This document shows, one piece after another, positions 13,346-18,440 of a DNA stretch of 60,372 nucleotides. The notes under the pieces were generated by a model. That model saw nothing but the letters and a program-made list of their open reading frames with translations, did no database searches and was not told the DNA's origin. The stretch spans positions 1,001,892 through 1,062,263 of the forward strand of contig NW_005434661.1 in assembly GCF_000315625.1 (NCBI RefSeq), read 5' to 3'. Position numbers and translations under genes: made by a program. The first letter of the stretch is position 1. Each line of letters begins with the position of its first letter. Source of the stretch: Guillardia theta CCMP2712. Taxonomy: Eukaryota; Protista; Cryptophyta.

Positions 13346-14871
13346 ACAACAATCACACGAGCAAGCAAGTAGTCAGCTGCACCTGACGGTTTTTCGCTCT
13401 GTTCTGCATTGCTGACAGAATCACCTGACCAAACAGTTTGAAATCAAATTGAGGACCTGCTCTCCTATTCTCAACGGCACAACACTCTGAATACACTTGT
13501 CGCTCTCTGACTCGCTCGCCATCAGGTTCTCCAAGAACCGTTTCGTTCTCGACACATCTACACCACTTCACGAAAGCTTCTCCATGCTCTCAATATTTCT
13601 CATGTTCTGTTCTGATCCATTTCCTCTGCATGTCCAGGTGTGCAGCCTTTCTCGCATCCTGCCCCTATCATTGTTCTGATTCTCTGATGCAACATACAGG
13701 ATCTTTCACGTCGTGTCACTTCCTTGCTTCTACCTCCTCATCACATTTTTCTTTCCATTAGATCCCGAAGCTCCATTTCCATTTGTCCGCAAGAAAGTTT
13801 TGTACATGGTCCCTCTCCTTTGCTCTGATCTCTCTGCCCTGCTTATGTGCTGTAGTAGCCTCCCAGCTCCTTGCTACGTTCTCCCTTCATCCATTCCCTC
13901 CTCCTCCTTCCATGTCCCCCTCCCTCGCTCCTTTTTCGCCGAAGTACCTTCGGCTTGGTTCGCCATGGTGCGTCTTTACAATCAGTTTTTGGATTTTTTA
14001 CTGCTACCAAGATAAAATGTTGAATAAACACAACCTCAATAACTTTGTATGGACTATTTATTTACATGGTACAGTAGTTTTTACAAATAGATGTAAAAAC
14101 TTCACAACTGTACCATTCTAAAACGAAAGTATGAATGGCTGTTTTTAAAACTTGACCGTAACGATTATAACGGCGAAGGCATTGAATTGAAGGGGTGGTG
14201 GGGGGCTGGTTTCACAGCCTGGGGTGGGTGGTAAAATGAGCGAAAAGGTAGGGTGACGAATATTTCAATAATCCAGGGTGGGGGTAGGAATCAAAGGGGG
14301 GTGGGGTAGTCCAAATTTGTGGTTCAAAAATCTGTCGTTGAGGCCCAGGGCATGGCGGGACAGAGAAAGCAGGACAAGAAGGAGAGGGAAGAGGAAGAGA
14401 GAGACGATGAGACAACGGAAGCGAAGATGAATGACACTCAGAAGACGATGAAGATATGATAGAGTGATGGCATGCTCGAAAATGAACGTTGGGGGACCGA
14501 ACTGTTGTGGATTTGAACTAGCGGGTAGCATAGGAATGAGCAGAGGCAACAAGATTCGCAAATGACGAAGGATAAGCTTGATGTAATTATTGAATCTAGA
14601 TCATGATTCAATACTTGAGTGCAGGGTTGAGACAGAAGCCTTTCAATTCCAAGCTGAGTTCCTGTGATGATGTAGTGTATTATGCATACAACTGAGCAAA
14701 AATCCATTTGCAAACTCATGCCAATCACTGAATGTTGTGGATTAGTTTTCAAGCAGTGGAATTTTGTCAAATGTACGTGCACTCACCAAATCATTTTCCT
14801 GGATGACATTTTAGTTTGATTGATGTTGCATCTTCATATCCGTGCCATTTCATGATGACATTCTTGAGCAG

Positions 14872-16656
14872 ATGATAGACCAAGAGTCGCTGAATGCATC
14901 AGTTGACGATTGTATGCCCTTCACTATAGAGGAATTCTCGAAGAGAAATTCAGATCCTCTGCATGAGCTTGACAGCATCTTGAAATACCGCCAGAAGGTT
15001 TCACAGCATGTTTTCATTACCACGTTAGCTAAAACTCATTGTGTGCAGATGGCAGACCAGGATCTTGTCTCTAATGGTCAGAGAGCTACGCCTAGAAGAC
15101 AAGGAACAGGGCGAGAGATCACCACTCGCGGCTTTGAATTCAAGAAGAGAGTTTTCTCCATGCCTCCCCAGCCCCTTGCAGACGTCACTTCCCAGCAGAA
15201 CTCTTCCATTATCCCTAGCCGTGGTCGGAGAACTGGCTTGAAGATTGGTTCCTCAGTTCTCAAGGACAGCTTTGGAATGGAGCGATTGAGTGACTTTTGG
15301 AATGCGGAAGAAATCGAAGCAATGAGGAGGAAGTCGAGTTTGGCTAGCGATGCCAGAGATCGATCCAAGACCAGCATGGACACCGGGCCGCTCTCTGAAT
15401 ACTCAGGGAGGGTTTCGCAGTACTCTCAAGACACCGAATCATCCAATGACAATGATTCCGCGAGTCCGTCTGGCATTTCCAAGCGTTCGGAGTACTTGGC
15501 TGATTGTTCTCAGAGTAGCGGAAAGGCCTCTTTGTCCAGAAATGATGAGAGCCAAGATCAGACCGAGCAGAGCTATGCTGATGCTTCCTGCACATCTGCG
15601 GAGAAGAGTAACGTCAACACGGATGCCTCCAAGCAGTCTATCTCTGAACTGAACTCGCCAAGCGTTGCAGACATGAGTGATGGCTCTCCTGCGATGGATG
15701 CGAGCAAGCGCTTGTCGTTTACAGACTCGGCCGAGAAAACTTCCAAGACCGATGATGCCTCCCCATGCTCCTCTGACGTCAGCTCTCGGCAGCCTCGAGT
15801 TTCGTTTGCAGAATCTGCTATCCGCCGCAAGTCTTCCATTTCGTTCGCTCGAACCCCAGGCACGAAGAATGGAGACACAAGCATGGAAGACTTCGACGTG
15901 GATGATTGCGCTGCAGCAGATTCAGGTGACGAGCAGAATGACGACCAGGACGAGAACCAGTCGATTCAGCAGGAAGAGATCAAGCCCAAGAAGGCCGCTT
16001 CGAAGAAAAGAGAGCGCGACGATGGCAGGCTTGCTCTTATTGACAGGCTGGACACGATGGGGCGTGCTTCCTATTGCAACACGGACTCGTACGCGCCCAA
16101 GTCCAAGAGGTTGTCAGATGTTGCTCCTCGCCCTGTCATCGAGGATGATGGGAAGAGGAGGAGCAAGCGCAGGAAGATGCGGCCCCTCCAGTACTGGAGG
16201 AATGAGAGGGTGGAATATGCTCGCGAAACAGGTGCTGTCTTGCCAGAGATTGTGGACCTGGTTGTGCGTTCTCCCGAACCCACTCCTTTCCGGCGGAAGA
16301 GATCTAAGGAGGAACAGGCTGTGGAATCCTCTCCAACCAGTGCCAACAGCAAGGCCAAGACAGTGAAGAAAAACAGGAACAAGAATAAGAAGTCCAAGAA
16401 GACATCCTCTCGAGACAACTTGCAGAAGGTTGATGTGGAAGAGGACGAAGATGAGGACGATGCCCCTATCAAGAAGCCCAAGGGCAAGACCGCCTTCTTC
16501 CTCTTCTCTGCAGACAAGATGTGGGAGGTTAAAGAGCAGCACCCCGACTTGTCAATCTCAGAGAGAGCTCAGATCCTCAAGGATCAATGGTTGGATGCTG
16601 ATGAGGCCACTAAGAAGCATTATGAGAGGCAGGCAAAGAATTCAGCCAAAGTGTAG
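14872..16656 (+). CDS. CENP-C: CENP-C/Mif2-like kinetochore protein with a C-terminal HMG box
   Basis: Mif2_N-like GRRTGLKIG...KDSFGMERLSDFW; CENP-C motif RRSKRRKMRPLQYWRNERVEY; HMG box KKPKGKTAFFLFSADKMWEVKEQHPDLSISERAQILKDQW...KKHYERQAK; possible in-frame intron near 14998-15048. Confidence 0.75.
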   Translation: MIDQESLNASVDDCMPFTIEEFSKRNSDPLHELDSILKYRQKVSQHVFITTLAKTHCVQMADQDLVSNGQRATPRRQGTGREITTRGFEFKKRVFSMPPQPLADVTSQQNSSIIPSRGRRTGLKIGSSVLKDSFGMERLSDFWNAEEIEAMRRKSSLASDARDRSKTSMDTGPLSEYSGRVSQYSQDTESSNDNDSASPSGISKRSEYLADCSQSSGKASLSRNDESQDQTEQSYADASCTSAEKSNVNTDASKQSISELNSPSVADMSDGSPAMDASKRLSFTDSAEKTSKTDDASPCSSDVSSRQPRVSFAESAIRRKSSISFARTPGTKNGDTSMEDFDVDDCAAADSGDEQNDDQDENQSIQQEEIKPKKAASKKRERDDGRLALIDRLDTMGRASYCNTDSYAPKSKRLSDVAPRPVIEDDGKRRSKRRKMRPLQYWRNERVEYARETGAVLPEIVDLVVRSPEPTPFRRKRSKEEQAVESSPTSANSKAKTVKKNRNKNKKSKKTSSRDNLQKVDVEEDEDEDDAPIKKPKGKTAFFLFSADKMWEVKEQHPDLSISERAQILKDQWLDADEATKKHYERQAKNSAKV

Positions 16657-17920
16657 TGAAGTCCAAGACGATAAGATAAGACCCAAGACAGAAGAAAGAC
16701 TACTTACTACTTTTATATACATCACTAACTTGTGCTCTTAGTTTTGACCAATAGCTTTCGATTCTGTTTGTAATAAAGCCCATCTGCTAACTTAGTGCAA
16801 GGGATGGGTGGGTGTTTTCCACTTGCCAGTGATAGTCTGTTATCATGTTAGTTCACAGAGCGTTGAAGAAACGATCTCGACCTTGCCATCACAAGTGCCA
16901 TTCACACAGTGAAACTCTGTGGTCGACATAGTTGCCTGATGTAAGCAACATATCAGATTTGAGACGACAGCAGCTTCAACATGCTTACTTGACCGCCTGC
17001 GAAGTCCTTGGCACTGAATTTGGGAAAGTGCATGGCTGGGAACTTCGGAAAGTGCATAGATGGAAACTTGAAGATCATATCTTGAAGCTGAGAGAACATC
17101 CTTCTCAGAATGTGCGGATCAGAATTACTTCAACAAAACACAATTCAGTTCTTGTGTTTAAACAACTATGAGACAAATAGCTCAAACCATGTTGATAATG
17201 TCTGACGCTATCCGACAGGAGACGTAAATCGCTTTGTTTCCGCACATTCTACAAAATATCTCAACCTCATCCTGCACTCATTTCATCTCTACTATTGAAG
17301 GCAACTCATCCATCGATAGCAACCTTGTCATCAAGCTCTATGAATGTAGTACATTCATTCACCCATGGATATTTCACTTGCAACAGAATCTTCTGTCACT
17401 TGAATCCTTGTCACTTATCTCAACGATGTCTCCATCACTCGACTCCATACATGACCCTTCGTCATCGCTCTATCTCTTGCCATCGCTCACTTCGCCATCT
17501 CTGCTCCTCCTCCCTACTGCTGCTGCTGCTTGTCTAAAGCCATGGACCTCAAACGTCCTCAAATAGACTTGGACGCCATTCCCCAGAGGGGCGCGACATT
17601 CCTAAAGTAATTTTAGTTAACATCTATTCTTTTCTATTAACTTAACATTGATAGGTACAGAATGAGATGATTGGGTGGGCGTTTGGACGGTAGCTGTAGT
17701 ACGAAGCACTACCTACGGGAATCCCTGCGATCTACCCTTGGGGTAGAAGTTTCGATTGTTCCTGACTCTTCATAATTTGGTCACAAAGTTCATGTCTTTT
17801 TAATAATAAAACGACAAACTTTCAAATTAAAATACGGTATATTCAAAAAAGTTCAAACATTTTGTAACATCGAAATACCCTCTTTCGAACTTCCTTGCCT
17901 GAAACGTTTCTCACGACTTT

Positions 17921-18030: not shown

Positions 18031-18440
18031 AAGCCAGCTCCCTCCATGCCGCCAGAGTGGCTCGGACGCGAAAGCTACCATCCTCTCCTCTCCTCCCTCT
18101 TCTCCTCTCCTCCTCCTCCTCCCCCTTCTTCTTCCTCTCCTTCTCCTCGTCATGCTCCTCTGCCCCTCTCTAACTCTTTGCTTCTACTCTCCTCTTCTTC
18201 CTCTTCTCTCCCCCCAACCCCCCGCCTCCTCCTCCTCCGCCCCCCCCCCTCCTCTGCTCCTCCCCCTCCTCCTCTGCCTCCTCTCTACCTTTTTGCTNNN
18301 NNNNNNNNNNNNNNNNNNNNNNNNNNNNNNNNNNNNNNNNNNNNNNNNNNNNNNNNNNNNNNNNNNNNNNNNNNNNNNNNNNNNNNNNNNNNNNNNNCCC
18401 ACCTGCTCAAACTCAGCACTCGATCCTTCGCTCCTTCGAT

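What the first reader, a model, noticed from the sequence alone, without database searches (positions are those of the whole stretch)
14872..16656. CENP-C-like protein that ends in an HMG box instead of a cupin domain
Seen: a Mif2_N-like motif (about 15220-15300), a long Ser-rich disordered region, a canonical CENP-C motif RRSKRRKMRPLQYWRNERVEY (about 16156-16218), and an HMG box (about 16465-16650) running to the stop, all in one ORF. Known: animal and fungal CENP-C end in a cupin dimerisation domain, and yeast Mif2 has an AT-hook. I know no described CENP-C-HMG fusion. Inference: a lineage-specific inner kinetochore protein that couples CENP-A reading to DNA bending.
Basis: partly seen in the sequence, partly recalled or inferred. 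Interest (0 to 1): 0.7.

Follow-up and report, generated by a model that had tools for sequence, protein, structure and literature searches.

The report
Cryptophyte CENP-C ending in HMG box
This Guillardia theta gene is the alga's version of CENP-C, the protein that anchors the chromosome-segregation machinery to centromeres. Unusually, it ends in a generic DNA-bending HMG box, an arrangement shared by its relatives but not described in the papers I could search.

Summary
The gene is on the + strand and is transcribed.

One exon carries, in order:
- a Mis12-binding (Mif2_N-type) motif
- a long disordered Ser-rich region
- a canonical CENP-C motif
- a basic/acidic linker
- a true HMGB-type HMG box that runs to the stop codon

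The window is Guillardia theta, and the gene is GUITHDRAFT_135067. Van Hooff et al. 2017 already list it as "CenpC" in their orthologue set, but say nothing about its HMG box.

The same architecture is found in a Hanusia phi transcript and in every complete environmental relative. I found no CENP-C cupin in the protein or in six-frame searches of the 87-Mb genome. A second CENP-C-motif gene also lacks a cupin.

"Instead of a cupin" needs a caveat. Plant CENP-Cs, and apparently the red-algal ones, also end shortly after the motif. The real novelty is the added HMG box.

The most likely role is a sequence-independent DNA anchor that stabilises binding of the motif to CENP-A nucleosomes. In plants, the motif needs a flanking DNA-binding region to reach centromeres. 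This role is inferred, not shown.

Verdict: a new variant of a known kind, of moderate interest.

The parts
14623..14871 (+). 5' untranslated region (minimum extent)
   Evidence: Spliced RNA-derived contigs of runs X1 and X2 start at 14623 and 14631. An in-frame stop lies just upstream of 14842.
14872..14997 (+). Coding exon 1, 42 aa (MIDQESLN...ILKYRQK). It is missing from the annotated 535-aa model.
   Evidence: The joint 14995->15047 (cut +2) appears in three runs. The peptide is conserved in Hanusia P0002 and in P0003. The frame was checked.
14998..15048 (+). 51-nt GT..AG intron, in frame and without a stop, so the ORF reads through it
   Evidence: The Hanusia transcript lacks these 17 codons.
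15049..16656 (+). Coding exon 2 (535 aa plus stop). It is identical to the annotated protein P0001 / GUITHDRAFT_135067.
   Evidence: RNA contigs are continuous over 15047-16836.
15097..15150 (+). Conserved N-terminal motif RQGTGREITTRGFEFKKR
   Evidence: Alignment A1. Coordinates.
15220..15300 (+). Mis12-complex-binding (Mif2_N-type) motif RGRRTGLKIGSSVLKDSFGMERLSDFW
   Evidence: Mif2_N scores 19.6 bits here and 28.7 and 30.1 bits in relatives, above the 23.5 cut-off. It matches the K. lactis Mif2 N-terminal peptide of entry 5t59 (E 0.021).
15301..16056 (+). Ser-rich, acidic disordered middle. It includes the conserved RVSFAES..RKSSISFARTP patch at 15796-15858.
   Evidence: AF2 pLDDT is below 50. 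Alignment A1. Coordinates.
16057..16134 (+). Family-specific block MGRASYCNTDSYAPKSKRLSDVAPRP, just upstream of the CENP-C motif
   Evidence: The columns are invariant in A1 and A2.
16156..16218 (+). CENP-C motif RRSKRRKMRPLQYWRNERVEY
   Evidence: It matches CENP-C motif peptides in PDB entries 7bxt, 4x23 and 6qld. The block profile retrieves cupin-bearing CENP-Cs.
16231..16287 (+). Conserved post-motif extension GAVLPEIVDLVVRSPEPTP
16288..16470 (+). Lys-rich basic stretch followed by an acidic patch; the linker to the HMG box
   Evidence: Read from the sequence. Disordered in AF2. This is the least conserved region.
16471..16653 (+). HMGB-type HMG box reaching the C-terminus; helix 3 is cut short
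   Evidence: Pfam HMG_box scores 35.2 bits over profile positions 3-56 of 69. HMGB1 box B matches at E 2.4e-6. AF2 gives pLDDT about 94 and three helices. All 50 top Foldseek rows are HMG boxes. It is 100% identical to Hanusia.

Best explanation
This is the Guillardia theta orthologue of the inner-kinetochore scaffold CENP-C/Mif2 (GUITHDRAFT_135067). Shown: the N-terminal RGRRTG...DFW motif is homologous to the segment of Mif2 that binds the Mis12 complex. The RRSKRRKMRPLQYWRNERVEY motif is homologous to the segment that binds the CENP-A nucleosome. Almost everything between them is disordered. No cupin dimerisation domain is present. The only folded domain is a C-terminal HMGB-type HMG box, which is conserved throughout the family. 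Inferred: the CENP-C motif docks on the acidic patch and the CENP-A tail. About 85 residues downstream, the Lys-rich linker and the HMG box bind the minor groove of nearby nucleosomal or linker DNA without sequence preference and bend it. This adds DNA affinity that stabilises centromere anchoring. It is the job done by the flanking DNA-binding regions of plant CENP-C and alpha-KNL2 and by the AT-hook region of yeast Mif2. It may also make up for the avidity that cupin dimerisation supplies elsewhere.
For: Gene model and expression: spliced RNA contigs from three studies remove only the 51-nt intron. They keep the motif, the HMG box and the stop in one exon.

CENP-C identity:
- S. cerevisiae Mif2 (7on1_C) aligns in the same order from the N-terminal motif to the CENP-C motif (E 1.6e-4).
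- The query also matches CENP-C motif peptides of nucleosome complexes (7bxt 0.0028, 4x23 0.0065, 6qld 0.019) and the Mif2 N-terminal peptide of entry 5t59 (0.021).
- Mif2_N scores above Pfam's cut-off in relatives P0010 and P0011.
- The block profile finds 351 proteins at E<=1e-3. Of the 90 best hits of at least 200 aa, 21 carry CENP-C_C and 9 carry Mif2_N.
- The protein is listed as CenpC in van Hooff 2017 Dataset EV1.
- A Mis12 gene is present in the genome at 48.4 bits.

HMG box:
- Pfam scores it at 35.2 bits, and it matches HMGB1/2 box B.
- AF2 gives pLDDT about 94. Foldseek aligns it to the SSRP1 and HMGB1 boxes at 0.8-1.2 A rmsd.
- F483, F484, F486 and W514 are invariant.
- It is 65/65 identical to Hanusia, against 86% in the middle region.

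Conservation of the fusion: every complete relative ends in an HMG box, as does the more distant P0058.

Functional precedent: in plants the CENPC and CENPC-k motifs are not enough for centromere targeting. Adjacent non-specific DNA-binding regions are needed, and the E. coli H-NS DNA-binding domain can replace them (PMC11879092; PMC12321929).
Against: There is no localisation, ChIP or DNA-binding data for this protein. The HMG box stops at profile position 56 of 69, so helix 3 is short, and DNA binding is assumed rather than measured. Away from Hanusia the box is less conserved than the motif block (29-42% against 63-74% identity). G. theta has a second CENP-C-motif protein, so the two may divide the work. 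A divergent, intron-split cupin partner cannot be fully excluded by six-frame searches. The Mif2_N hit in this protein alone is below Pfam's cut-off.
Confidence: 0.62

Rival explanations
1. The HMG box is not mainly a DNA anchor. It is a protein-interaction or regulatory module. For example, it might fold back on the adjacent acidic patch, recruit chromatin factors, or stand in for an HMG-box partner such as the SSRP1 subunit of FACT, which sits at kinetochores in animals.
For: An acidic stretch (VDVEEDEDEDD) lies directly before the box. Helix 3 is truncated. Human FACT binds CCAN, including CENP-C (PMC11912937). The SSRP1 HMG domain is among the best structural matches.
Against: The wedge and core residues typical of DNA-bending HMGB boxes are invariant. 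A Lys-rich arm precedes the box, as in DNA-binding HMGB-type proteins (my own knowledge). In human FACT the HMG domain is dispensable for CCAN binding.
Confidence: 0.15
2. The two CENP-C-motif proteins of G. theta split the ancestral roles. The HMG-bearing one may not be the constitutive kinetochore scaffold. One of the pair could act like KNL2/M18BP1 in CENP-A deposition.
For: A second locus at G000:C15 (about 475600-476900) encodes a protein of about 440 aa that ends about 25 aa after a CENP-C motif. Its Hanusia orthologue P0013 ends at the same point. Both G. theta genes are listed as CenpC by van Hooff 2017. Paralogous CENP-Cs with divided features are known in Apicomplexa (PMC9418836).
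Against: Only the HMG-bearing protein has the Mis12-binding motif that defines the kinetochore-scaffold role. The paralogue has no Pfam domain at all, SANTA included.
Confidence: 0.15
3. The cupin function is still present but encoded elsewhere, as a separate motif-less cupin partner like apicomplexan AKiT9/10. In that case the HMG box is an addition, not a functional substitute.
For: Cupin-only CENP-C paralogues without the CENP-A-binding motif exist in Apicomplexa. Six-frame searches lose short, intron-split domains.
Against: PF11699 gave no match at E<=10, and a custom profile of 14 CENP-C cupins gave none either. The same kind of search did find the intron-split Mis12 gene. Plant CENP-Cs have no region similar to the Mif2 homology block (the cupin region) after the motif (PMC549713).
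Confidence: 0.1
4. The fusion is an artefact of the gene model or the assembly: an HMG-box gene wrongly joined to CENP-C.
For: None beyond the general risk. The RNA contigs are chimeric with a convergent neighbour at the 3' end.
Against: The ORF is a single uninterrupted exon, with no joint between the motif and the box in three RNA studies. The same fusion appears in a Hanusia transcript and in independent metagenome contigs. Some of those have an intron inside the box.
Confidence: 0.02

Closest known systems
Fungal/animal CENP-C (S. cerevisiae Mif2, human CENP-C)
   Same: It has an N-terminal Mis12-complex-binding motif, a long disordered middle and a CENP-C motif, in the same order as Mif2. 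An accessory DNA-binding element lies near the motif; in Mif2 this is an AT-hook (my own knowledge).
   Different: It has no C-terminal cupin dimerisation domain. Its only folded domain is an HMG box.
Plant CENP-C (Arabidopsis, grasses), and apparently the red-algal CenpC entries
   Same: Plant CENP-C ends within about 80 aa including the motif and has no similarity to animal or fungal CENP-C beyond it (PMC549713). The red-algal CenpC entries also end soon after the motif, though I ran no domain scan on them. In plants the motif needs flanking non-specific DNA-binding regions for centromere targeting (PMC11879092).
   Different: The plant DNA-binding regions are unstructured basic stretches. 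Here a discrete folded HMG box follows the basic linker.
KNL2/M18BP1 with a CENPC-k motif
   Same: It carries a CENP-C-type motif near the C-terminus and depends on nearby DNA binding.
   Different: KNL2 is defined by a SANTA domain and has no Mis12-binding motif. This protein has no SANTA hit at E<=10 and does have the Mif2_N-type motif.
HMGB-type architectural proteins (HMGB1/2 box B, SSRP1 of FACT, Nhp6)
   Same: The fold matches, and the AFFLF wedge segment resembles that of HMGB1 box B. A basic arm precedes the box.
   Different: It is a single box with a shortened helix 3, placed at the end of a kinetochore scaffold rather than in a free chromatin protein.

Membership tests
CENP-C / Mif2 | CENP-C motif (Arg-rich half, then P-x-x-[YF]-W-R-x-E) that binds CENP-A nucleosomes | tested here: met
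   The sequence is RRSKRRKMRPLQYWRNERVEY at 16156-16218. It matches the motif peptides of 7bxt, 4x23 and 6qld. The block profile retrieves cupin-bearing CENP-Cs at E<=1e-5 out of 1.84 billion proteins.
CENP-C / Mif2 | N-terminal Mis12-complex-binding motif (Pfam Mif2_N) | tested here: inconclusive
   This protein scores 19.6 bits against a cut-off of 23.5. Relatives with the same aligned motif score 28.7 and 30.1 bits. It matches the Mif2 N-terminal peptide of entry 5t59 at E 0.021. The feature is met at family level and is below threshold for this sequence alone.
CENP-C / Mif2 | C-terminal cupin dimerisation domain (PF11699) | tested here: not met
   There is no hit at E<=10. AF2 shows no folded domain other than the HMG box. 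The genome has no match to PF11699 or to a custom cupin profile. The feature is not universal: plant CENP-C lacks it.
CENP-C / Mif2 | Centromere localisation and binding to CENP-A nucleosomes | not testable with these tools
   This needs imaging, ChIP or reconstitution.
HMG box (PF00505) | Profile score above Pfam's gathering cut-off | tested here: met
   It scores 35.2 bits against 25.4. Relatives score 35.7-50.5 bits.
HMG box (PF00505) | L-shaped three-helix fold | tested here: met
   AF2 predicts helices 482-497, 503-515 and 519-534 of P0001 at pLDDT about 94. All 50 best Foldseek rows are HMG boxes, with 0.8-1.2 A rmsd to SSRP1 and HMGB1, although the E-values are weak because the query is mostly disordered.
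HMG box (PF00505) | Full-length helix 3 | tested here: not met
   The match stops at profile position 56 of 69, and the protein ends 4 residues later. Every relative is cut short at about the same place.
HMG box (PF00505) | DNA binding and bending | not testable with these tools
   The hydrophobic wedge and core residues F483, F484, F486 and W514 are invariant. The activity itself is inferred.
KNL2 / M18BP1 | SANTA domain | tested here: not met
   Pfam gives no SANTA hit at E<=10. None of the 90 profile hits had one at E<=0.001.

The most novel reading that the evidence does not exclude
In the cryptophyte lineage, CENP-C gained a structure-selective HMGB-type box. The box makes the inner kinetochore read DNA shape (bent, distorted or non-B centromeric DNA) as well as the CENP-A nucleosome. 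It thereby replaces the multivalency that cupin dimerisation gives in animals and fungi. This would be a natural version of the engineered motif-plus-DNA-binding-domain centromere-targeting module.
Probability: 0.25. Interest if true: 0.7.

Novelty: new variant of a known kind. Interest (0 to 1): 0.5.

Why it matters
CENP-C is the hub that links centromeric chromatin to the outer kinetochore. How it achieves stable, sequence-independent anchoring is an active question. Recent plant work shows that the CENP-C motif needs a neighbouring generic DNA-binding region, and that a bacterial DNA-binding domain can supply it. The cryptophyte protein is a natural, conserved case of the motif joined to a discrete, well-understood DNA-bending domain. 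Its domain boundaries are clear, which makes deletion and swap experiments straightforward. It also shows another way a cupin-less CENP-C can be built. Finally, it corrects the annotated gene model, which lacks a 42-aa first coding exon.

Tried and rejected
- Downstream cupin exon: rejected. The stop at 16654-16656 is kept in all RNA contigs. The two joints downstream are CT..AC, so they are introns of a convergent minus-strand gene. Relatives also end after the box, and in one the next gene starts 334 nt away on the other strand.
- Cupin elsewhere in the genome: PF11699 and a custom profile of 14 CENP-C cupins both found nothing. A Mis12 search served as a positive control for intron-split genes.
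- Third CENP-C-motif locus: not found.
- Word search restricted to the motif block: returned only the same family.
- ESM Atlas search: no usable feature hit, and all TM-scores were below 0.3.
- Foldseek with the whole, mostly disordered model: only weak E-values, though every top row was an HMG box.
- Naming the organisms behind the environmental relatives: failed. The clusters carry no names. ERR9769281 is a large metagenome. The sample behind P0186, JGI 3300017275, stayed unidentified.
- Literature: no paper holds CENP-C, HMG box and cupin together. The five papers that hold CENP-C, HMG-box and kinetochore concern other matters.
- The scan's own notes held nothing on this gene.

Full report
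**Observation.** The window has one long open frame at 14842..16656 on the + strand, with its first ATG at 14872. RGRRTGLKIGSSVLKDSFGMERLSDFW lies at 15220-15300 and RRSKRRKMRPLQYWRNERVEY at 16156-16218. The HMG box runs from about 16471 to the last codon before the stop at 16654-16656. Pfam gives HMG_box 35.2 bits (cut-off 25.4; profile positions 3-56 of 69) and HMG_box_2 21.2 bits. Mif2_N scores 19.6 bits, just under its 23.5 cut-off. No cupin or SANTA hit appears even at E<=10.

**Gene model and transcription.**
- The word search returned the window's own annotated product, P0001 (535 aa, starting MADQDL). It also returned a Hanusia phi transcript product, P0002, at 86% identity.
- P0002 lacks 17 residues of the read-through ORF. 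RNA-derived contigs from three separate studies (X1, X2, X5) carry the matching joint 14995->15047. This is a 51-nt GT..AG intron at 14998-15048.
- The CDS is therefore 14872-14997 plus 15049-16656, giving 577 aa.
- The 42-aa exon-1 peptide is conserved in P0002 and P0003. The annotated model therefore lacks its first coding exon.
- The contigs are continuous from 15047 to 16836, so the CENP-C motif, the HMG box and the stop sit on one exon.
- The two joints further downstream (16836->16882 and 16934->16988) are CT..AC. They are introns of a convergent minus-strand gene whose 3' end abuts the stop codon. Stranded 3'-biased reads of X21 confirm the minus strand there.
- No downstream exon can add a cupin.
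- I translated the joined 577-aa product only inside a script, to get coordinates, and sent it to no search tool. All searches used the read-through reference, P0001 (the exon-2 product) or parts of stored proteins.

**Organism and earlier record.** The genome is 87.1 Mb in 669 contigs. The 535-aa protein stands letter for letter in the CenpC orthologue file of van Hooff et al. 2017 (EMBO Rep, PMC5579357, Dataset EV1) as Guillardia_theta GUITHDRAFT_135067. So the window is Guillardia theta, and the CENP-C assignment is already on record. Neither the paper nor its supplements contain the words cupin or HMG.

**CENP-C orthology.**
- Against solved structures, the protein aligns with S. cerevisiae Mif2 (7on1_C). 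The match runs in the same order from the N-terminal motif to the CENP-C motif (E 1.6e-4).
- It also matches the CENP-C motif peptides in nucleosome complexes: chicken 7bxt (0.0028), rat 4x23 (0.0065) and Mif2 6qld (0.019). It also matches the K. lactis Mif2 N-terminal peptide of entry 5t59 (0.021).
- Relatives P0010 and P0011 pass the Mif2_N cut-off with the same aligned motif.
- A 91-position profile of the motif block (alignment A2) was searched against 1.84 billion representatives. It found 351 proteins at E<=1e-3.
- Of the 90 best hits outside the family that are at least 200 aa long, 21 carry the CENP-C cupin, 9 carry Mif2_N and none carries SANTA.
- A Mis12 gene is present in the genome at 48.4 bits.
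- KNL2-like identity is rejected.

**HMG box.**
- The best solved relatives are HMGB1/2 box B (E 2.4e-6 to 4e-5) and UBF.
- AlphaFold2, run on the family alignment, shows that the only confident fold in the protein is residues about 478-535 of P0001. These form three helices at pLDDT about 94. Everything else is disordered.
- All 50 best Foldseek rows are HMG boxes. The rmsd is 0.8-1.2 A to the SSRP1 and HMGB1 boxes. The E-values are weak because the query is mostly disordered.
- F483, F484, F486 and W514 are invariant across the family.
- The residue before the AFF wedge is Thr or Ser rather than the Asn of SOX-type boxes. From my own knowledge of the family, this marks the non-sequence-specific class.
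- Helix 3 is short in every member.
- Between Guillardia and Hanusia the box is 65/65 identical, against 86% in the middle region. This points to strong constraint. In more distant relatives it is 29-42% identical, less than the motif block at 63-74%.

**Distribution of the fusion.**
- Every complete relative from the word search shows the same order of parts and ends in an HMG box. These are P0003, P0004, P0005, P0006 and P0008.
- In P0007, P0009, P0010, P0011 and P0050 the gene callers read through an intron inside the box.
- On a 23.8-kb metagenome contig the gene ends after the box, and a convergent TIP49 gene begins 334 nt later.
- The profile search added P0058 (539 aa), a more divergent complete protein with the Mis12-type motif, the CENP-C motif and a C-terminal HMG box.
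- It also added P0186, a fragment with a degenerate motif followed by an HMG box.
- Apart from Hanusia, the relatives come from unnamed environmental assemblies, so the taxonomic span stays open.

**The cupin question.**
- The genome gave no match to PF11699 at E<=10 and none to a custom profile of 14 CENP-C cupins.
- Only two CENP-C-motif loci exist.
- The second is GUITHDRAFT_104032 on contig C15. It is an ORF of about 440 aa that ends about 25 residues after its motif. Its Hanusia transcript orthologue P0013 ends at the same point, and neither has any Pfam domain.
- Cupin-less CENP-C is not unique to this lineage, however. Talbert et al. 2004 report that plant CENP-C ends within about 80 residues including the motif and shows no similarity to the Mif2 homology block (PMC549713).
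- The red-algal CenpC entries of van Hooff's file also stop soon after the motif. I judged this from the sequences alone and ran no domain scan on them.
- The accurate description is a cupin-less CENP-C with an HMG box added. A swap of one domain for the other has not been shown.

**Mechanism.**
- Shown: the homology of both motifs, the fold and conservation of the box, and the lack of any other folded domain.
- Inferred: the motif binds the CENP-A nucleosome. The Lys-rich linker and the box, about 85 residues further on, grip and bend adjacent DNA without sequence preference, which stabilises anchoring.
- The nearest functional precedent is Yalagapati et al. (NAR, PMC11879092). In plants the CENPC and CENPC-k motifs alone do not target centromeres. 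Adjacent non-specific DNA-binding regions are required, and the E. coli H-NS DNA-binding domain can replace them.
- Yeast Mif2's AT-hook is a similar accessory (my own knowledge).

**Rivals.** There are four:
- a protein-interaction or autoregulatory role for the box
- a division of labour with the paralogue
- an undetected motif-less cupin partner, as in Apicomplexa (PMC9418836)
- an artefactual fusion, which is refuted by the RNA and cross-species evidence

**Novelty and score.** No paper in the searched library joins CENP-C with an HMG box. The gene's CENP-C identity is already known, and cupin-less CENP-C is known in plants. What is new is the conserved HMG-box tail, so this is a new variant of a known kind. 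It would moderately surprise a kinetochore specialist. It also offers a natural test of the motif-plus-generic-DNA-binder model. Interest: 0.5.

Noticed in passing
G000:C15:475600-476900 (+) (loci L002, L005, L013): This is a second CENP-C-motif gene, GUITHDRAFT_104032. The ORF is about 440 aa and ends about 25 residues after RRSARKRMRPLQFWRHERIEY, with no Pfam domain. The published dataset model is only 105 aa. The Hanusia transcript orthologue P0013 is 443 aa and ends at the same place.
   Followed up: partly
window 14872-15048: The annotated 535-aa model (P0001) starts at 15049. It lacks a conserved 42-aa first coding exon (14872-14997), which is separated from it by a 51-nt in-frame intron.
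   Followed up: yes
window 16660-17570 (-): A convergent spliced minus-strand gene has introns at 16837-16881 and 16935-16987. Its 3' end abuts the CENP-C stop codon. The longest ORF in the spliced form is 69 aa, and depth is high in the 3'-biased stranded run X21. RNA assemblers merge it with the CENP-C transcript.
   Followed up: partly
window 16741 and 17252: All RNA-derived contigs carry an extra T after 16741 and an extra A after 17252 relative to the window. These are either assembly indels or a strain difference, and both lie outside the CENP-C coding sequence.
   Followed up: no
proteins P0007, P0009, P0010, P0011, P0050 (environmental relatives): One subgroup of relatives has an intron inside the HMG box, just after DLDVTGQ. 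Gene callers read through it, so the precomputed Pfam lists miss the HMG box in these entries.
   Followed up: partly
window 18050-18400: A long CT-rich low-complexity tract runs into a run of N (an assembly gap at about 18299-18397), downstream of the gene pair.
   Followed up: no
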